DNA of 63,668 nucleotides, counting the filler, from Octopus bimaculoides (taxonomy: Eukaryota), in the NCBI RefSeq assembly GCF_001194135.2. It is 6 parts of 5 records of this genome, joined end to end, with 100 filler letters (N's around TTAATTAATTAA, not from the genome) between each part and the next. Parts side by side here need not be neighbours in the genome. Positions count along the whole stretch, not along the records: positions 43,403 to 62,136 come from NC_068991.1; 5 more parts are not named here. One strand, 5' to 3'. A program made the position numbers and the translations under genes. Below, in pieces: positions 2,810 to 59,499 of this stretch; positions within the stretch are counted from its first letter, which is position 1, and each line of letters begins with the position of its first letter. The notes under the pieces were generated by a model, which was given only the letters and a program-made list of their open reading frames with translations, did not search any database and had not been told where the DNA came from.

Positions 2810-3205
2810 TATTCCTTTCTGCTATAAGCACAAGGCCTGAAATTGGGGATGGGGGGGAGTAGAGGACTAGTCGATAACATCGACCCCAGTGCTTCACTGG
2901 TACTTAATTTATCGACCCCGAAAAGATGAAAGGTAAAAGTCGACCTCGGTGGAATTTGAACTCAAAACGTAAAGACAGACGAAATGCCGCGAAGCATTTT
3001 GCCCGGCGTGCTAACGATTCTGCCAGCTCGCCCCACCTTCGCTGCCTTAATATTAAGAAATACTGATTTCAAATTTTGGCACAAGGCCGGCAATTTCAGG
3101 GGAGGGTACTAGTCGATTACATTGACATCAGTGCGTAACTGGTACTTATTTTATCAACCCCCGAAACGATGAAAGGCAAAGTTGAACTCGGCGGCACTTG
3201 AACAC
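2810..3205 (-). mobile_element. Two tandem copies of tRNA-derived SINE family A
   Basis: On the minus strand: head GGCGAGCTGGCAGAATCGTTAGCACGCCGGGC, B box GAGTTCAAATTCC, central CCTTTCATC(C/T)TTTCGGGGTCGATAAATTAAGTACCAG (resembles, from memory, the Meta/Sauria-SINE central domain), tail CCTTGTGC... Confidence 0.85.
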
Positions 3206-43915: not shown

Positions 43916-44469
43916 AGATAATGCGAATAGCTGCCGGACAGTATGTTCGCCATTGAACCGGAATTAAATTAAAATAGCCACCTATGAATCATACTCAACG
44001 AATATAGACACAATTGACAGAGAAGATAGAGGCGGTTTTCGTCAGATGTCTATACATACATACATACATACATACATACGTACATACATACATACATACA
44101 CACATACACACATGCATATACATACATATACACATAGACATACATACATACATACACACATACATACATAGACATACGCCCACTTAGTATAATTGTATGG
44201 ATATTTCGAAGTTTAATCGAAAATACTTCTCATGCAGTGTTGAGCTAGCGGGTTTAAGTCTCGGATCTAAGGTCTATGTATGTATGTATGTATGTATGTA
44301 TGTATGTATGTATTTTGTATGTATGTGTGTGTATATATGTGTGTCTATGTATGCGTGTGTGTATGTATGCATGTATGTGTATGTGTGTACGTGTGCATAT
44401 GTATGTGTATGAATATATGTATGTATGAATGTATCTGTCTATCTGTCTGTCTGTCTGTCTGCCTATCTA

Positions 44470-44547
<78 letters not shown>

Positions 44548-44759
44548 GTTGGTAAATGCTAATGCACCAAAGCAATCTTCTCTATTTGTAGACATATTAC
44601 CGTTGTTGCTACTAACAGGTAAAGATACACTATCTTAGGTATAAATCTGTTGTATTTAGTACCATCACCCTGCGTTCAACCATCGTAATTTCGTAGATGT
44701 AAGCTTTGGTACAAGTAATATCCTTGATTCGTTATAATCCATTCTAAAAGGGGGAAAAA

Positions 44760-45330
44760 TATATGAGAGCTGTTAGAGTGCCGGACAAATGCCTTGAAGT
44801 ATTTGTTTCGACTCTGAACGTTCTGAGTTCAAATTCCTCCGACGTCAAGCTTTTTGTTCATCGTTCTGTTTTTTTTCTTCGTTTTTGTTCTTTTTCGTCA
44901 ATAAATTAAAGTACCAGTCAGGTACTCAGGTACTGGACCCATTTAATCAGCTAATCCCTTTTTGGCCTTGTGTCTACTTTACGTTAAAACTACCTACTCT
45001 TCTTCTTCTTCTTCTTCTTCTTCTTCTTCTTCCACATACGTACACTGTTATACTACATACACTTTTTTTTCCTAAATCATTCCATTCTATGAAAATCCTT
45101 ACACTTTATTTCTTGTCTTTGCATCGCCTACCCACTCCTCATCCGTCGCTCAGGGTAGAAAATGAAATCACCACGTTTTTACGATCTGGGTTCAAATTCC
45201 GCCGAGGTCGATTTTGCTTTTCATTCTTTAGGGGATCGATAAAATAAGTACCAATTGAGTACTAGGATCGATATAATCGACTAGTCTCCTTCTGCAAAAT
45301 TTCAGGCCGTGTACCTTTTTAGTAGAAAGA

Positions 45331-45754: not shown

Positions 45755-45799
<45 letters not shown>

Positions 45800-45895
45800 G
45801 TCTATCTATCTATCTGTCTGTCTGTCTGTCAATTTATCTATCTCTCCGTGTGTCTGTCTATGTATGTATGTATGTATGTATGTATGTATGTATGC

Positions 45896-45936
<41 letters not shown>

Positions 45937-47500: not shown

Positions 47501-47987
47501 ATATATTTATTTATATATATATATCACATATGTGTGTATGTACATAATGTGTGTATTTATATATGAATGGATACGAGTGTGTATTATTAAACTTCATACA
47601 ACCAGTTGTTAACTTGTATGATGTACACACACGCATGCGCTCTCTGTGGCATATTCACCTACACAAAACATCAGGTTACCTGAGACAAATATATTCATGC
47701 GTTATACAATATACACAAGCGCACATGCAGCAATTAAGTAGGTGTGCCGTTGTGCAACGAACTGAAATCATCTTGGGGGCAAAGTCTCCCTTCTTGGGGG
47801 TAACGAAAAGGTTTGGTGCATTTGTCATTATTTATAAAGAACGCAGATTGTTTTTCTCTCCCCACCAAGAAAGGGATTTTTGCCCCACTAAACGACATAC
47901 CTACGTAATTGTACTTTTTTCGCAATAAACAACACTTTCGTTCAACGCAGGTCTCTACTAGTTCTCGTTGAATTCTGTTCGTGTCTG

Positions 47988-48047
<60 letters not shown>

Positions 48048-51000
48048 ACTGTCTGTCTGTCTGTCTGTCCGTCCGTCCGTGAGTGTTGAAAATGACGTCT
48101 ACATATCGGCGACATTGTGAGTAAAATGTGTGTATATGTAAATGTATATATGTATAATGTGTGTGTGTGTGCATATGTATATGTATATATGTATAATGCG
48201 GTGTATGCATGTGTATATGTATATATATGTATAATGCGTGTGTGTGTGCATACGTAAATTTATATATGTATAATGTGTGTATGTATGTATGTATGTTTGT
48301 GTAGTTATGCGTCTGTGCGTGTGTGTAAAACTTTATTTTCCTGTAACTAAGTAATCGTTGTGTTTATAATAGTATTCACAACAAAGTCGTTTTCCTCACG
48401 CCCCACAAAAATGAAAACTGACGTGTTCAAACATTCACACACACATACATAGCTACACACACACACATACACACACAGAGTCCTGATAACACAATGTATG
48501 TTCATATACCCATCTATCTATCTTTGTATTTTCCCCTGTAGCTGTATCTCCCTCACACACATACATACACGCATATACACACACTTTCTATGACTTGTCA
48601 CCATTTATCTATCACATAACATACACACACACACACACATACTAGCATACACATGGAGTATCGTCGGCGCGTGGACTTGTTTAAACTCATTAGTTCTCCT
48701 CCTCCTCCTCCTTTCTCTGTTCCGTCTATTTCTCCCTCCTACTTCTGTCATATATCTTTTTTCCGTCTTAAGTTTCACTCTCACTCTTACTCCAACGAAT
48801 TCCTCACTCCCACCCAACCTCACTTCCTCTTTATTCATAAACACACACACACACAGAAACGTACCGTATATATGATGTTTATCAGGCGTGTGTATGTATG
48901 TATGAATGAACGTATGCGTATATATAAATGTATGTATATGTATAGATGTATGCATATATATATATAAATATTCATGTAAAGTATGCGTGCATGTTTGTAT
49001 GTGTACACACAGACACACACACGTGTGTGTATAATCAAAGGACACTGTCCTGGGGAAAGGGTAGGGCGAATCTATGTAAACATATATCTGGAAGATTCTG
49101 ATCTGGTGGCATACACACACTCAAACGTACACAAACAAAAAATTACGCGCGCACACTAGTATACATACGCATGCGCGTACGCCGAAGTTAACTTAAGACA
49201 CACCCACAAGACATGCTTGCACTCACACACACACAGAGCGTCAATCGTTTTTGTGTACATAGCTACACATGTGCGTATGTTTACGCACATATAATACACG
49301 CATGTGTTTTACCTTCGTCTCTTTCGATCTTTCCGTCTGTCTGTCTGTCTGTCTATCTGTCTGTCTGACGGACAGAAGAAATACTGTTGCACTCACGCGC
49401 ATGTAACACACATCCATAAACATGCACACACACACAAAACAACGCGCTACACATCAGTAAACAAACGCATGACATTACCATACGCACGAACACTCTCTCT
49501 CTTTCTTTCTGTCTCTGTCTCTGTCTGTCTCTCTCTCTCTCTCACGCGCACGTACATATACACACAACCAGAGAGGGGTACAGAAATATGTGCAATTACA
49601 CATATACATATACACTTATATACACACACACTCACTCACATATACGATGTATACCACTGTAATAAGCAATATACCATCGCTAAATAGCCTATTCCCGCTC
49701 ACTCTCACTTCCCCTCACACACACACACACACACACACACATTCACACACACACACGCACACACATACAAGAGGTACCGCGGCAATAAGCATCACCACCA
49801 CCGCCACCACCACCACCACCACCACCACCACCATCATCGTAATAAGCACATCACTGCCACCACCACTCTATAGCTCTTACTCACATCTGATGACGTAATA
49901 TTTTATTGTTATTTATAGCGTTCCCTACCAATCTGGTTTCATTTGTGATAAGATATTTGTTTGGGAAACTTCTGAGGAAGAAGAAAAAAATAAAAGAAAA
50001 ACCTACGAGAGAAGCATATATTATCATATATATATATATATATATATATTTACATTTTTATATTATCTTACAAAACATAAACCTACAATTATATTTATAT
50101 TTATAAAAAAGTGAAAGAACAATACATGCAATATACATATTATAAAGCGGATAACAAGAAAATAATCACAACATACAACTGAACACCTATTTATTTGTAT
50201 TTATGCACACGCTCTAACTGGATTTAAAAGGAAAGTTTATTGAAGTTGCGCGGACTTGTTATGATTTTAATTTAAAGGGGGAAAAAAAAAGTAAAGTGAC
50301 GTTTTTGGTAATATATTCTACAGAAATCCAAGGATATAAAGGTACATACAAAAATCTCTTCTTGTAAAAGCTTTTACATATGAAAAAAAGAATGCTTTTT
50401 TTTATATTTCGTATGAAAAAAGTTTTCTTTCTACGTTAAAGATATTTTTTTTATCGCCAACATGTATTAATTACAATTATATGTTATCATATACGCGTAG
50501 TTTTTTTGTTTTTGTTTTTACTTTAAACTATATCTCCAGTTGATTTTTTTTTTACTTAAAAAACATTATCGCTTACTAAGTTAATCCATATTAAATATTT
50601 TCTACACGTATGTTTTTGTTTTAAGCTAATTCTTTTTCGCGTGAAAAAAGTTTTTGCTTTTAATTTAAAAATATAGTTGTTACTAAGTGATAGATACATG
50701 TTTTTCAAGTATTTTTTTTAAATCTGAAACTTTTTTTTTTGCTAGAAAAAAGTTATTTTTATTTCGATTTTTTAAGCTTAATATTCGATAAACCCTTTTC
50801 ACGTTTCATTTTATCTTAAAGCTAAAATTTAAACTATGTAATTAGCAGAGAGAAAGTCAGGCGTAGATAGAGATGGGGAAGCATATACATCGGCGAACAG
50901 AAAGAAATTGTTTATTTAGTATATTTTCAATGAATCCAGTTTTATATGTGTTTGTAGACGCTTTTGTGTTAATTCTGTGACGAATTTTAATATTTCTTGG

Positions 51001-51568: not shown

Positions 51569-51971
51569 AATACAGAGTGGACCCTGAATAAGAAACAGAA
51601 ATTGTGAAGAATTCAGTTGGGAAATTACATCATTTTCAACGTTACGCACACAGACTAAATATACTTATTATTATTTACTTGTTATATTTTTGTTTGCCTT
51701 TTTTTTTTCATTGACAATTCACTGAAGAGAAAAGAAAAGAAAAAAAGGATTACCACTATTCCATTATTATCAGATTAAAGTTTTCATGTTATTGAACATT
51801 GGTTCTTGGCTCTCAAAAAGACAAAGACAAAAAAACTTGTTGCAATATTTGTTTCGCTTCGTTTGACTTACTTTATACTTTTTTTTTGCGGTTTTTGAGA
51901 ACTTGATATTTAACTAAAAGAACTAAAGAATTAAGTGTGAACATTTTTTTTTTTTGCTTCTTGGTTCAATT
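51569..51971 (+). other. Probable 5' UTR part of the large exon
   Basis: Strong acceptor CTTTCTTTTCTTTTCATATTTCTTTCAG| at 51568; ATGATG at 51972 is the first in-frame ATG of the long ORF. Possible upstream donor CAT|GTGAGC at 51293. Confidence 0.4.
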
Positions 51972-53310
51972 ATGATGCAATCTGCTCCAATCAGTGAAGA
52001 ATTATACGATTCACTGAACTCTAACCAAAAACCTACCCAGCCCAAGACAAAAGTTGCCATCGAAGACACAACAATTAGTCCTTTCGAAGACGGTGGAGGC
52101 GACGACGAAGACGACGACGACGACGATTCCATTCGGAACTTGTCCAATATGACCCCTTGCACACCCTCGGTGGGATCTTTTGACAGTAGTTACGCTACTG
52201 ACGACTCCCCTTCTAATATTTCGCCACCTTATCACCATCATCACCACCAACAACAACAACAGCAGAAGGGGGACGAAGAGCATCATCATCTGCAGCAGCA
52301 AGAACAGCAGTACAACTTGTTCCAATATAGTCAACAGCAGCAGCAGCAGCAGCAATTTTGTCGCTCTCTCTGCCGCCGTCAGCGCTTCGAAGGACCGCAA
52401 AACTATCCCCACCGTTACCACAACCAGCAGCAACACCAGCACTCCCATCCTCCCTACTTCCCGCAGCAGCAGGAGCAGCATAATCATCATCTTCAACAAC
52501 AGTTCCAGGCTCTGACAATAGGAAATACAACTGCTGCTATCGGTGCTGTAGGCGGAGGCGGAGACGGTGGTGGTGGTGGTCGTCGTCGTGGCCCAGCTGT
52601 CATATCGACCAGTTTGTGTAGTGTAGAAAGTATGAGCGATTATTACTCGATGCGCGAGAGAAGTTCGAACGACTTTGACGAAAACGACGGCGACGACGAC
52701 GACGACGACGATGATGTCGTCGTTGGCGACGATGACGACGAAGACAAAGACGACGACGACGATAATAACGACGACGTCGATGATGTAGACGAAGTGGTAG
52801 GCGCCGCTGACGACGATGATGAAGATGACGACGACGTCTTCTCCAAAGACGGAGTAAGTGGAAACAGCGCATTTCCGAGTACGCAACGACACGGCGTGTC
52901 TCACAGCCGACCAATACCGATTCGATCGGTTGCCAGAAGAAACAGAACAAATGATTTGAACACGATGAACCACCATCATCACCACAATAACAATAACCAC
53001 AACAACAACAACAACGGTTCTACTTCTTCTTACGGAAGTCCGAGCAGTTTCCCCATGAGCATGGACCATCATTTCATGGCTAACTTCCGCAACAATTTCC
53101 CGCAACATTTCCAAGGACCTCACGGCATGAGTCCTGACTGTTGCCAGGCGGGAAATATTCTGGTATCTTGTAGCTGGGGATCGGAACTACGGCGCACTAT
53201 CGGAACACAAACCTACCCCATGTTTAGAAGAACCAGCACATTGTTTGGGATTCAAACTCCCTGTCACTTACACAACCAGTCTAGTATCCGTGCAATCATC
53301 AGCTCAACAG
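51972..53310 (+). CDS. First coding exon (446 codons + 1 nt) of a low-complexity, probably disordered protein with DDVF, SRPIPI, TIGTQT and GIQTP motifs; Bmf/Bim-like BH3-only protein is a hypothesis
   Basis: 1.3-kb stop-free frame with mixed-codon polyD/Q/H/N tracts and unique segments; donor CAG|GTAGGA at 53311 (phase 1). Downstream exons not found before the 62137 linker. Confidence 0.8.
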
Positions 53311-53403
53311 GTAGGAAAAAAAAACTTTTATTCTCTTTCTTTTGCTGTTCGCTTTTAATTCCATCTTGTTCGCGCTTGTTTTTCCTATCTCTGATTAACT
53401 TAA

Positions 53404-53779
53404 CCTCTTAGCATATATATTTTTTACGTGGATATTGAAAAAAAATGTGCTATTTCTTTATTTATTGTTTATTTTGAATTTGTATATAAGGAAGAATAAG
53501 TACAGAAATTATTTGGGATCAGTTATGATTTAACATAAAGTTACTTCATAGTTACTATGATAGTTACTAACAGTTAACGATAGAAAAACGGTAATTACAT
53601 CATGAACGAAGTATTTCTGGTTAGAAATAAGTGACAAATATCTCAGAAAAAAGTGAACGTATATTTTCGTTCAAATATATTTACTAGACATCTCTGAACG
53701 AAAAAATACGGCATTTCGTTCATATATATATTTACTAGACATCTCTGAACGAAAATATACGGCATAATATGTTAAGAGG
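53404..53779. mobile_element. piggyBac-like MITE (376 bp) with TTAA target-site duplication
   Basis: TTAA|CCTCTTAGCATAT ... ATATGTTAAGAGG|TTAA; 13-bp TIR with one mismatch; TTAA at 53400-53403 and 53780-53783. Confidence 0.8.
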
Positions 53780-57652: not shown

Positions 57653-57706
<54 letters not shown>

Positions 57707-58160: not shown

Positions 58161-58506
58161 GTATCTAAATAATACAATACAGGGTTACATAGTTCTTACC
58201 TCTTTATAACAGGGCTAGCCAGGGACCCCAAAGATCTAGGGGCCCGATTTTATTCAAAGTATGCTGTGGCTTGCTGTTAATAAACAAACACTATAGGGCC
58301 CAGCACATGGGTTTTATTTAGCCCGAGTCTATAATGATGCTAAGGCGGTATTGATAGCTTGTACTTAACCAATATTGGGTTAGCAATTTCCTTCTTGCAT
58401 GGTCTGTTCCTAACAATACGGGCTGCTATAATCCTTGCAGTCTGTACCGAATAAATGTTTCTAATTTAGCCTCAACCCTAGTACTAGATAGGTATTTAAT
58501 TTTTTC

Positions 58507-58743
58507 GGTAATTTTTCAGATTAACACCCGCACGATCTTCACTAGGGTGTTAGGGTTAGGGTTTTAGGGTCAGGGTTAAGGTTTTAGGGTTAGGGTTAGG
58601 GTTACGGTTAGCGTTTGGGTTAGGGAATTCCGTCCCTAACCGTAAGCGTAACCCTAAACACTAACCCCAACCCTAACCCTAAAACTAACCCTAACCCTAA
58701 CACCCTAGTGAAGATCGTGCGGTTGTTAATCTGAAAAATTACC
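58507..58743. mobile_element. Palindromic MITE (237 bp): 57-bp TIRs, 8-bp TSD, head-to-head telomeric repeats; Merlin-like
   Basis: TIR GGTAATTTTTCAGATTAACA(C/A)CCGCACGATCTTCACTAGGGTGTTAGGGTTAGGGTT with one mismatch; TSD ATTTTTTC at 58499-58506 and 58744-58751; interrupts a family A SINE (~58480-58835, minus). Confidence 0.9.
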
Positions 58744-59300
58744 ATTTTTTCGATCCCGGAGGGATGAAAAGCAAAGTTGGCCTCCATGGGATTTGAACAC
58801 AGAATGTAAAAAATCGAAACAAATACCGCATGACATCTCTCTCCCTTCCACAGATCCCCAAACGAATGATATTGTTACCCTATTGTTAATTTTCTTATGT
58901 AGTCTGTATCAAATTGCGCTCCAAAGTAGTGAGCTTTGTGATAATTAAGACACTGTTCTATATTATACAGTTTAAAATAAACGAAATTCGAAGTGTTAAA
59001 ATACATGCTTTTAATTCTTCATTAGATGTTTGTGTGCGAGTATGTATGCTTAGTTTGAATAAACCAAATATAGAACATGTATTGAGTACTTCCTCGTTTA
59101 TCTGCCAAATCTCAACCAACCTTTGTGTATCTCTCTCTCTCTCTCTCTCTCTTTTTATTTCCATATATTTATATGCGCACTTGTGCATTTGTACAATTGT
59201 TTAATCGATCTAAAATTAATTTGCGTCTCAGTTATTTTTCAGTCAGTTAAGTCTGTAGGTCTGTGTGTGTTATTTCTGGCGTATTTTTAGGATGTGCGGT

Positions 59301-59380
59301 TTGTGGTGTATGCGTTCATGCGGGTAGTGAATGCCGTTGTTTGTGGTGTATGCGTTCATGCGGGTAGTGAATGCCGTTGT
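59301..59380. repeat. Perfect 40-bp tandem duplication
   Basis: TTGTGGTGTATGCGTTCATGCGGGTAGTGAATGCCGTTGT twice. Confidence 0.95.
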
Positions 59381-59499
59381 TATTTAGCCTATGTCACACC
59401 TTTGTTAATAAAAAAGAGCCTTCTAACCAAGACTTACCTCGTCTCTTATTCATTTACAGTGTAACCTGAGATTCTATAACGTATAGCATTTTTGAAAGG

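What the first reader, a model, noticed from the sequence alone, without database searches (positions are those of the whole stretch)
58499..58751. Palindromic transposon made of head-to-head telomeric repeats (Merlin-like MITE mimicking a telomere fusion)
Seen: a 237-bp element is an almost complete palindrome. It has 57-bp TIRs with one mismatch, then degenerate (TTAGGG)n running inward from the left, (CCCTAA)n from the right, and GGAATTCC at the axis (58624-58631). An exact 8-bp TSD (ATTTTTTC) flanks it, and it splits a family A SINE, so it arrived by transposition. Established: TTAGGG is the common metazoan and molluscan telomere repeat; an inward-facing (TTAGGG)n-(CCCTAA)n junction is the classic signature of end-to-end chromosome fusion; 8-9-bp TSDs with GG-starting TIRs typify Merlin DNA transposons, although hAT and P elements also make 8-bp TSDs. 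Inference: a mobile family could scatter interstitial telomere-like sites able to form cruciforms or G-quadruplexes on both strands, recruit telomere proteins or seed telomerase healing. It would also mislead searches for fusion scars in cephalopod genomes.
Basis: partly seen in the sequence, partly recalled or inferred. Interest (0 to 1): 0.8.

Follow-up and report, generated by a model that had tools for sequence, protein, structure and literature searches.

The report
Octopus palindromic transposon with telomere-repeat core
A 237-base mobile-DNA insertion in an Octopus bimaculoides intron is almost a perfect palindrome built from two inward-facing runs of telomere-like repeats, so it looks like a chromosome-fusion scar but is a small transposon, and it is one of several transposon families in octopus genomes that carry such repeats.

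Summary
A 237-bp element (58507-58743) has 57-nt terminal inverted repeats (one mismatch). Degenerate (TTAGGG)~12 runs in from the left and (CCCTAA)~11 from the right, meeting at GGAATTCC. It has an exact 8-bp target duplication, ATTTTTTC. Removing it restores an interspersed repeat that eight paralogues read straight through, so it is an insertion and not a fusion scar or a fold-back artefact. The window is Octopus bimaculoides chromosome CM046611.1, first intron after the first coding exon of LOC106874024.

No second copy of this exact family turned up in about 148 kb of Octopus DNA; no octopus genome could be searched. Three other inverted-repeat families did turn up in O. bimaculoides and O. 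sinensis. All start GG and end CC. All have 8-bp duplications (nine further insertions, 6/8 to 8/8). Nearly all carry TTAGGG/CCCTAA runs. All 13 perfect two-unit runs in that DNA lie inside such elements.

Best reading: a foldback-type non-autonomous DNA transposon of a GG/8-bp group, probably Merlin. Its arrays most likely expanded from TTAGGG seeds in both repeats. The Merlin label, the copy number and any telomere-related function remain untested. It is a new variant of a known kind, of moderate interest.

The parts
58499..58506 (.). Left copy of the 8-bp target-site duplication, ATTTTTTC.
   Evidence: Exact direct repeat of 58744-58751. Paralogous copies of the host repeat have a single TTATTTTATC-type sequence at this place.
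58507..58563 (.). Left terminal inverted repeat, 57 nt. It consists of a 36-nt non-repeat part, GGTAATTTTTCAGATTAACACCCGCACGATCTTCAC (58507-58542), followed by TAGGGTGTTAGGGTTAGGGTT.
   Evidence: 98% complementary to 58687-58743. The 43-nt terminal sequence is found only at the two ends of the element, with 0 matches expected by chance.
58543..58625 (+). Degenerate G-strand telomere-like array running inward from the left; it holds 7 perfect TTAGGG.
   Evidence: Tandem Repeats Finder: period 6, 12.2 copies, 76% matches at 58549-58625. Unit list; hexamer counts.
58624..58631 (.). Palindromic junction GGAATTCC at the axis where the two arrays meet.
   Evidence: Read directly from the sequence. 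It forms the loop region of the predicted hairpin.
58634..58707 (+). Degenerate C-strand array (CCCTAA)n, the mirror image of the left array; it holds 6 perfect CCCTAA.
   Evidence: Tandem Repeats Finder: period 6, 11.2 copies, 77% matches at 58634-58701. The inner parts of the two arms are about 72% alike (47 of 65 columns), against 56 of 57 in the outer part; Fisher p = 4e-5.
58687..58743 (.). Right terminal inverted repeat, 57 nt, ending ...GAAAAATTACC.
58744..58751 (.). Right copy of the target-site duplication, ATTTTTTC.
58440..58506 (-). Left-hand part (in window coordinates) of the interspersed SINE-like repeat that the element interrupts.
   Evidence: Joined to 58752-58860, it aligns colinearly with eight paralogues from L002 and L001.
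58752..58860 (-). Right-hand part of the interrupted SINE-like repeat. It contains GGGATTTGAACACAGAA.
45176..45266 (-). An uninterrupted paralogue of the host repeat inside the same piece; it serves as a stand-in for the empty site.
   Evidence: It reads GGTACTTA-TTTTATCGATCCCC straight across the insertion point.

Best explanation
The element is a non-autonomous, foldback-type class II (cut-and-paste) DNA transposon. It inserted into a SINE-like repeat in the first intron after the first coding exon of Octopus bimaculoides LOC106874024. A transposase supplied by another element would have recognised its GG-initiated 57-nt terminal inverted repeats and made a staggered 8-bp cut at ATTTTTTC.

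It belongs to a wider group of Octopus inverted-repeat elements, here called families B, C and D. These share GG...CC ends and 8-bp duplications, which is the signature of the Merlin superfamily. They characteristically carry short TTAGGG/CCCTAA runs just inside their terminal repeats or in their core.

In this element almost nothing except the two long inverted repeats is left. Each repeat holds a TAGGGTGTTAGGGTTAGGG seed. The seeds most likely grew by replication slippage into 11-13 degenerate units per arm, which now meet head to head at the axis.

Shown:
- the insertion, the inverted repeats and the duplication;
- the palindrome;
- the existence of sister families;
- the confinement of telomere-like runs to these elements.

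Inferred:
- transposase-mediated mobility of this copy;
- Merlin as the source of the transposase;
- slippage as the origin of the arrays.

The element is not a relic of chromosome fusion. Nothing here shows that it has a cellular function.
For: Insertion anatomy:
- The terminal repeats match at 56 of 57 positions and the duplication is an exact 8 bp.
- Removing the element restores a repeat that eight paralogues read through.
- The largest reading frame over the element is 55 aa (58620-58787). It runs out into the flanking repeat and has no relatives.

Source:
- The piece is 100% identical to GCA_001194135.2 CM046611.1 (L002).
- The element lies 5.1 kb downstream of the first coding exon, inside the gene's range.

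Sister families:

| Family | Terminal sequence | Copies and their 8-bp duplications |
|---|---|---|
| B | GGTACTACTAAAGCAG... | L003:2228-2426, GAAAGAAA/GAGAGAAA |
| D | GG[CT]ACTAC...ACAGAGGTCCCG | L003:8238-8408, CTAATTTT 8/8; L005:2629-2763, 7/8 |
| C | GGATCTTT..TTTGA.CGGCA | TAACGTTG 8/8; GGCAATTC 8/8; GGATGCCC 8/8; CAAATGTT/CAAATGTC 7/8; a fifth copy 6/8 |

Family C occurs in both Octopus species.

Association with telomere-like runs:
- 12 of the 13 perfect runs of two or more TTAGGG/CCCTAA units in 147.7 kb lie in bounded elements that make up 3.2% of that DNA.
- The 13th lies in a C-family copy whose far end was not defined.
- About 0.02 such 12-mers are expected by chance (my own estimate, not a tool result).

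Length variation at a homologous place:
- Next to the shared sequence ATTTATG.CATC.TTCGTG.GTTTGTAC, one C-family copy has (TTAGGG)2 and another has about 12 units plus an inverted partner.

Conservation gradient in this element:
- The outer 57 nt differ at 1 position; the inner arrays differ at 18 of 65 columns (Fisher p = 4e-5).
- This is expected if the ends are constrained while the arrays mutate and slip.

Merlin:
- The superfamily is defined by 5'-GG ends and 8-9-bp duplications (PMC8101967).
- That paper found 191 Merlin-related sequences in O. bimaculoides.
- Merlin transposase genes are present in the genome (P0069, P0073).
Against: - Only one copy with this terminal sequence was seen, so 'family' and 'mobile' rest on anatomy and on analogy with the sister families.
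- No autonomous element with matching ends was found for any of the four families. The Merlin gene loci fetched (L003-L006) have no recognisable terminal repeats.
- The terminal sequence resembles those of B and D only weakly: GGTA, then CAG, then CCCG about 22 nt in. I could not show that this exceeds chance.
- Slippage from a seed is inferred from length variation in family C, not from copies of this family.
- The two arms share a few unit variants in the same order: TTTTAGGG, and TTACGG against TTACGC. That could also mean one arm was copied from the other.
- The assembly derives from a single project, and no reads or second assembly were available to confirm the palindrome.
Confidence: 0.6

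Rival explanations
1. Telomerase-filler origin. An ancestral transposon suffered an internal double-strand break or an aborted gap repair after excision. Telomerase extended both exposed 3' ends with TTAGGG, and the two healed ends were joined. That would leave two terminal repeats separated by head-to-head telomeric arrays, and the product would still be mobilisable.
For: - The orientation in this element, G strand 5'->3' inward on both arms, is exactly what extension of both 3' ends predicts.
- Insertion of telomeric repeats at double-strand-break repair sites is documented in vertebrates (abstracts of PMC7215372 and PMC8537989, seen).
- In one C-family copy (L005:2977-3378), (TTAGGG)2 sits where the left half of the element appears truncated.
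Against: - In sister elements B, C3 and the D-family copy at L005:2629-2763 the runs face the other way, C strand inward. Extension of both ends cannot produce that.
- Most runs are only 2-4 units long.
- The arrays here are 23-24% degenerate, and the TAGGGTG variant is part of the conserved terminal repeat on both arms.
Confidence: 0.2
2. The superfamily is not Merlin. The element would be mobilised by a hAT, P, Mutator-like, Zisupton or Novosib transposase, all of which can give 8-bp duplications.
For: An 8-bp duplication alone is not diagnostic, and no transposase was linked to the element.
Against: - All ten insertions in the four families end GG...CC, except one copy with AG.
- From my own knowledge, hAT ends are typically YARNG and P ends CANRG. 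ATTTTTTC does not fit the hAT target pattern nTnnnnAn.
- Merlin is unusually abundant in this genome (PMC8101967).
Confidence: 0.25
3. Relic of an ancestral end-to-end chromosome or sister-chromatid fusion, that is, a true fusion-type interstitial telomeric site.
For: Head-to-head (TTAGGG)n-(CCCTAA)n is the classical fusion signature, as at human 2q13 (review PMC6410037).
Against: - The arrays are enclosed by 36 nt of non-telomeric inverted repeat on each side and by an 8-bp direct duplication.
- The whole unit interrupts a single interspersed repeat that is continuous once the unit is removed.
- It lies inside an intron.
- Similar structures recur at unrelated loci.
Confidence: 0.01
4. Assembly or library artefact: a fold-back chimera, or a ligation at the central EcoRI-like GAATTC.
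For: - Perfect or near-perfect palindromes are a known kind of artefact (my own knowledge).
- The axis is GGAATTCC.
- Only one assembly was available.
Against: - The arms differ by 19 of 122 columns, including indels. A chimera would be an exact reverse complement.
- An artefact would not create an 8-bp duplication of the target or leave the host repeat exactly restorable.
- Analogous elements occur in the independently assembled O. sinensis genome.
Confidence: 0.03
5. One-off capture of an extrachromosomal palindromic telomeric fragment at a staggered break by end joining, with no transposase involved.
For: Only a single copy is known. Filler DNA can be captured at breaks (my own knowledge).
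Against: The precise GG...CC symmetric ends and the exact 8-bp duplication are shared with nine other insertions from three families. That points to one enzymatic mechanism.
Confidence: 0.04

Closest known systems
Merlin superfamily non-autonomous elements (MITEs); Feschotte 2004 as summarised in PMC8101967
   Same: - 5'-GG ends.
- 8-bp (8-9-bp) target-site duplication.
- Terminal repeats within the reported 24-462-bp range.
- No coding capacity.
- A host genome rich in Merlin transposase genes.
   Different: - No transposase-bearing partner with the same ends has been identified.
- In the papers I could search, no Merlin element is described with a core of telomere-type hexamers.
Foldback elements (Drosophila FB, Galileo and similar); compared from my own knowledge
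   Same: The element is almost entirely two long inverted repeats. Their inner parts are tandem sub-repeats, with a unique terminal segment. It forms a long hairpin.
   Different: - It is much smaller (237 bp).
- The sub-repeat is the 6-bp telomere motif rather than 10-31-bp units.
- The duplication is 8 bp, against 9 bp for FB and 7 bp for Galileo.
Fusion-type interstitial telomeric sites such as human 2q13 (PMC6410037)
   Same: Inward-facing (TTAGGG)n-(CCCTAA)n arrays that meet head to head and are degenerate.
   Different: The arrays are bounded by non-telomeric inverted repeats and a target-site duplication. The unit is inserted within a single repeat copy in an intron, and similar structures recur at several loci.
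Short interstitial telomeric sites inserted by telomerase at double-strand-break repair sites (PMC7215372, PMC8537989)
   Same: Short telomere-like runs at internal sites that arose as insertions.
   Different: Those are runs in one orientation, without inverted repeats or an 8-bp duplication. Here the runs travel as part of a transposon.
Telomere-bearing transposons of ciliates (Oxytricha TBE1, Tetrahymena Tel-1); compared from my own knowledge
   Same: Transposon-like elements with inverted repeats that are physically associated with the host telomere motif.
   Different: In the ciliate elements the telomeric repeats sit at the outer tips. Here they are internal to the terminal repeats and form the core.
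Tandem-repeat-carrying non-autonomous elements of molluscs (Helentron-derived elements in oysters, PMC7492417; DINE-1, PMC4067079)
   Same: Short mobile elements of molluscs that spread tandem repeats through the genome.
   Different: From my own knowledge, those are rolling-circle elements without target duplications. This element has symmetric ends and an 8-bp duplication.

Membership tests
Class II terminal-inverted-repeat transposon, MITE type | Terminal inverted repeats at both ends | tested here: met
   57 nt, 56 of 57 positions complementary; 0 matches expected by chance.
Class II terminal-inverted-repeat transposon, MITE type | Target-site duplication flanking the element, and an empty site that is restored when the element is removed | tested here: met
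   ATTTTTTC occurs on both sides. Eight paralogues of the host repeat read through the site.
Class II terminal-inverted-repeat transposon, MITE type | Small size and no coding capacity | tested here: met
   237 bp. The longest reading frame over it is 55 aa; it runs into the flank and has no relatives.
Class II terminal-inverted-repeat transposon, MITE type | Many dispersed copies, each with a different duplication | tested here: inconclusive
   One copy in 147.7 kb of Octopus DNA. No octopus genome could be searched. Scans of other collections are uninformative, because the control scan with the abundant C-family end found no octopus DNA there. Sister family C does meet this feature.
Merlin superfamily | Terminal repeats beginning 5'-GG | tested here: met
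   GGTAATTTTT...AAAAATTACC. Criterion taken from PMC8101967.
Merlin superfamily | 8- or 9-bp target-site duplication | tested here: met
   8 bp, also readable as 9 bp. Nine sister insertions also show 8 bp.
Merlin superfamily | An autonomous partner with the same ends that encodes a DDE_Tnp_IS1595 transposase | tested here: inconclusive
   Merlin transposase genes exist in the genome (P0069, P0073). The four loci fetched have no terminal repeats matching any of the elements. A genome-wide search was not possible.
hAT superfamily | 8-bp duplication fitting nTnnnnAn, and ends of the YARNG type (criteria from my own knowledge) | tested here: not met
   The duplication length fits. But the ends are GGTAA, and ATTTTTTC has T rather than A at position 7.
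Foldback elements (a structural class) | The element consists almost wholly of long inverted repeats whose inner parts are tandem sub-repeats | tested here: met
   Arms of 121 and 116 nt; period-6 arrays of 12.2 and 11.2 copies; a single hairpin with z = -22.
Fusion-type interstitial telomeric site | Head-to-head telomeric arrays joining two formerly terminal chromosome regions | tested here: not met
   The arrays are head to head, but the two flanks are the two halves of one repeat copy inside one intron.
Helitron/Helentron-derived tandem-repeat carriers | No target-site duplication and asymmetric ends (criteria from my own knowledge) | tested here: not met
   An exact 8-bp duplication and symmetric ends.
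Genuine telomere repeat of the host | TTAGGG is the telomere motif of this species | not testable with these tools
   The only experimentally determined cephalopod motif is TTAGGG, in Amphioctopus areolatus (PMC13218726, PMC6160780). For O. bimaculoides it is assumed.

The most novel reading that the evidence does not exclude
The TTAGGG dimer is a functional part of a whole group of Merlin-like transposons in octopods. It would be a binding site for the transposase or for a host telomere-repeat-binding (Myb-type) protein. These elements would then have seeded most interstitial telomere-like sites in octopus genomes, thousands of potential binding sites, hairpins and fragile points. Palindromic forms like this one would arise when nothing but two seed-bearing ends remains, or when telomerase heals an internal break.
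Probability: 0.12. Interest if true: 0.8.

Novelty: new variant of a known kind. Interest (0 to 1): 0.5.

Why it matters
Head-to-head telomeric repeats inside chromosomes are routinely read as scars of chromosome fusion. Here a transposon produces the same picture. The fetched Octopus DNA was a small sample (147.7 kb) chosen through Merlin genes, but every telomere-like run in it sits inside a transposon of one structural group. If that holds across the genome, most interstitial telomere-like sites in octopods are carried by transposons, and scans for fusion scars or for telomere ends in cephalopod assemblies must mask them. [quoted passage not shown] And it would give a system for asking why one transposon group keeps a telomere motif next to its ends.

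Tried and rejected
1. Finding other copies through predicted proteins. I translated the only open frame of the terminal repeat and searched 5.8 billion proteins; nothing was found. Exact look-ups of the 55-aa and 485-aa window reading frames were not on record.

2. DNA pattern scans with the terminal sequence in the metagenome, prokaryote-genome and viral collections gave 0 hits. A control scan with the abundant C-family end gave only one non-octopus match, L007. These collections therefore hold no octopus DNA and the zeros mean nothing.

3. The orthologous empty site. The O. sinensis orthologue (P0002, on a 16.9-kb contig) and two other isoforms could not be fetched. The Argonauta hians locus (L001) is too diverged and has no trace of the element.

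4. Linking the element to a Merlin transposase. Octopus Merlin proteins taken from the supplement of PMC8101967 were aligned and searched. Four loci were fetched. None has ends like families A-D. An apparent GGGG...CCCC pair around the L005 gene looks, by eye, like SINE sequence.

5. A weak 13-mer match to the terminal sequence at L002:35067-35079 is not a copy.

6. Rfam and tRNA scans found nothing above the curated thresholds. The sub-threshold microRNA-family hits over 58571-58697 reflect only the hairpin shape.

7. I rejected homology between the ends of this element and those of families B and D as a firm claim. They share only GGTA, CAG and CCCG at similar distances.

8. Literature searches for transposons with telomeric-repeat cores found no description in the held library.
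Full report
**1. What is there**

- A 237-bp element occupies 58507-58743. Its terminal inverted repeats are 57 nt long and differ at one position.
- The first 43 nt occur nowhere else in the window, and none would be expected by chance.
- Each terminal repeat starts with 36 nt of ordinary sequence, GGTAATTTTTCAGATTAACACCCGCACGATCTTCAC, then TAGGGTGTTAGGGTTAGGG.
- The hexamers continue inward. Tandem Repeats Finder reports 12.2 copies (76% matches) on the left and 11.2 copies of CCCTAA (77% matches) on the right. They meet at GGAATTCC, 58624-58631.
- The element aligns to its own reverse complement at 84%. The arms match at 103 of 122 columns.
- As a single strand it would fold into one hairpin of -100.9 kcal/mol, 22 standard deviations below shuffled controls.
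- ATTTTTTC flanks it on both sides.

**2. It is an insertion**

After removing the element and one ATTTTTTC, the flanks join to GGTATTTAATTTTTTC|GATCCCGG.
- That junction lies inside an interspersed SINE-like repeat.
- One paralogue in the same piece (45176-45266, minus strand) reads straight across it.
- So do five more copies in the surrounding O. bimaculoides locus and two in Argonauta hians. None needs a gap at the junction.

This rules out a fusion scar, because the two flanks are the two halves of one repeat copy. It also makes a fold-back assembly artefact very unlikely. The arms differ by 19 of 122 columns including indels, and an artefact would not duplicate 8 bp of the target.

**3. 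Where it is**
- A 485-aa reading frame in the piece (51954-53411) is 99% identical to an O. bimaculoides protein annotated 'transcription factor mef2A-like', LOC106874024.
- Fetching that gene gave L002, from GCA_001194135.2 chromosome CM046611.1. The piece is 100% identical to L002:1432-20165.
- The element is L002:16536-16772. It lies 5.1 kb downstream of that first coding exon and inside the gene's range, so it is intronic.

**4. Is it a family?**

I could not search any octopus genome directly. Indirect routes failed or were uninformative.
- A protein search with the translated terminal repeat found nothing.
- Pattern scans of the metagenome, prokaryote-genome and viral collections found nothing. 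The control shows those collections hold no octopus DNA.
- In all Octopus DNA I could fetch (147.7 kb without N, from five loci) this terminal sequence occurs once.

The copy number of this exact family is therefore unknown.

**5. Sister families**

To test the Merlin idea I took octopus Merlin-like proteins from the supplement of PMC8101967. I aligned them, searched with the profile, and fetched the loci of two O. bimaculoides and two O. sinensis hits (L003-L006). Those loci contain three further families of inverted-repeat elements.

| Family | Terminal sequence | Copies | 8-bp duplication |
|---|---|---|---|
| B | GGTACTACTAAAGCAGCGCGGACCCG... | L003:2228-2426 (199 bp, near-palindrome) | GAAAGAAA/GAGAGAAA, 7/8 |
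| B | same family | L005:3649-3862 (O. sinensis relative) | 7/8 |
| D | GG[CT]ACTAC..AAATACAGAGGTCCCG; clearly related to B | L003:8238-8408 | CTAATTTT, 8/8 |
| D | same family | L005:2629-2763 | 7/8 |
| C | GGATCTTT..TTTGA.CGGCA | L004:5575-6284 | TAACGTTG, 8/8 |
| C | same family | L005:2977-3378 | GGCAATTC, 8/8 |
| C | same family | L005:16077-16672 | GGATGCCC, 8/8 |
| C | same family | L005:12303-14058 | CAAATGTT/CAAATGTC, 7/8 |
| C | same family | L006:14927-15299 | 6/8 |

Together with the finding, that makes ten insertions in two species. All have GG...CC ends (one copy has AG) and 8-bp duplications.

**6. The telomere-like runs belong to these elements**
- Every bounded copy except the O. 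sinensis B relative carries TTAGGG or CCCTAA runs in its interior.
- All 13 perfect runs of two or more units in the 147.7 kb lie in these elements. Twelve are in bounded copies that make up 3.2% of the DNA. The 13th is in a C-family copy whose far end I could not place.
- None occurs in 94 kb of Argonauta hians.
- Orientation is not fixed. The G strand runs inward in the finding and in the L004 C copy. The C strand runs inward in B, in the L005:12303 C copy and in the L005 D copy.
- Run length is not fixed either. Beside the shared sequence ATTTATG.CATC.TTCGTG.GTTTGTAC, one C copy has two units. The L004 copy has about twelve units followed by an inverted partner array.

**7. How it most likely arose and works**

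The anatomy is that of a non-autonomous cut-and-paste element. A transposase made elsewhere binds the ends, and integration at a staggered 8-bp cut gives the duplication.
- GG ends with 8-9-bp duplications define Merlin among the known superfamilies (PMC8101967).
- That paper found 191 Merlin-related sequences in O. bimaculoides, the largest count it names among protostomes.
- No partner with matching ends was found. Merlin is therefore the best-fitting label but is not demonstrated.

For the arrays, I favour growth by slippage from a TTAGGG-dimer seed that is part of each terminal repeat. Three observations support this.
- The seed lies inside the conserved 57 nt on both arms.
- The inner arrays are much more diverged than the ends: 18 of 65 columns against 1 of 57, p = 4e-5.
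- Family C shows length variation at a homologous site.

The main rival is telomerase extension of both 3' ends at an internal break followed by joining. It predicts exactly the orientation seen here. Telomeric insertion at repaired breaks is documented in vertebrates (PMC7215372, PMC8537989). But it cannot produce the C-strand-inward arrangement of sister elements.

**8. Claims that go beyond the data**
- TTAGGG as the telomere repeat is experimentally known for only one cephalopod, Amphioctopus areolatus.
- A canonical G-quadruplex motif is present only on the + strand.
- Binding of telomere proteins, telomerase seeding and cruciform formation are untested.
- Sub-threshold microRNA-family hits over the hairpin reflect only its shape.

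**9. Novelty and score**

Small inverted-repeat transposons, foldback architecture and tandem repeats inside such elements are all known. I found no description of a transposon whose core is a head-to-head pair of telomere-motif arrays. Nor did I find any report of a transposon group that consistently carries the telomere hexamer. The library is partial, and repeat databases could not be consulted. [quoted passage not shown]

I rate it a new variant of a known kind, with interest 0.5. It is real and tidy, and it has a practical consequence for reading interstitial telomeric sites in cephalopod genomes. But it is a non-coding transposon copy with no shown function, and the copy number of its own family is unknown.

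Noticed in passing
window 51954-53411 (+): A 485-aa open frame rich in poly-Q, poly-H and poly-D. It is the first coding exon of O. bimaculoides LOC106874024. Identity is 99% to the 'mef2A-like' protein, 75% to an O. sinensis protein annotated 'homeobox protein 13-like', and 41% to an Argonauta hians protein. It has no Pfam domain, so the annotated names probably reflect low-complexity matches only.
   Followed up: partly
L003:10001-10891 and L006:10001-10891: A Merlin-derived 296-aa gene sits in conserved gene order in O. bimaculoides and O. sinensis. The proteins are 88% identical with no gaps, and neither locus has terminal repeats. It is a candidate domesticated transposase rather than an active element.
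   Followed up: partly
L005:12828-14062: A tandem array of 12 copies of a 103-bp unit (96% matches). The unit is the terminal segment of a C-family element and lies inside that element (L005:12303-14058). It shows a small transposon end turning into satellite-like DNA.
   Followed up: partly
L003:1881-3104: A 1.2-kb foldback element related to family C (arms 1881-2101 and 2886-3104). The telomere-run-bearing element B (2228-2426) sits inside it with its own 8-bp duplication, so these elements are nested.
   Followed up: partly
L006:5995-6080 versus L003:8230-8260: At the orthologous site, O. sinensis has the first 7 nt of the D-family element (GGCACTA) followed directly by a C-family end. The D insertion therefore predates the species split, and C has been active since.
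   Followed up: partly
window 59299-59381 and 53665-53765: Two short tandem duplications: a 40-bp unit x2.1 at 100% identity, and a 51-bp unit x2.0 at 94%. Their significance is unknown.
   Followed up: no
window 44050-44550, 45755-45935, 47984-48300, 57653-57705 and elsewhere: The piece is dense in TATC/ATAC/TATG tetranucleotide and TG/CA dinucleotide microsatellites. These account for most long reading frames and for the sub-threshold mir-297, mir-466 and mir-3149 hits.
   Followed up: no
window 58571-58697 (-): Sub-threshold Rfam matches to mir-629, mir-331 and mir-744 (26-31 bits against cut-offs of 72-87; E = 0.1-0.4) lie over the palindrome's centre. They reflect hairpin shape only. Whether the intronic hairpin yields small RNAs is untested.
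   Followed up: no
L007:2530-2552: An exact 23-nt match to the C-family end in a JGI metagenome contig. The contig has no other similarity to the octopus loci and by eye looks G+C-rich and bacterial. I take it as a chance match.
   Followed up: yes
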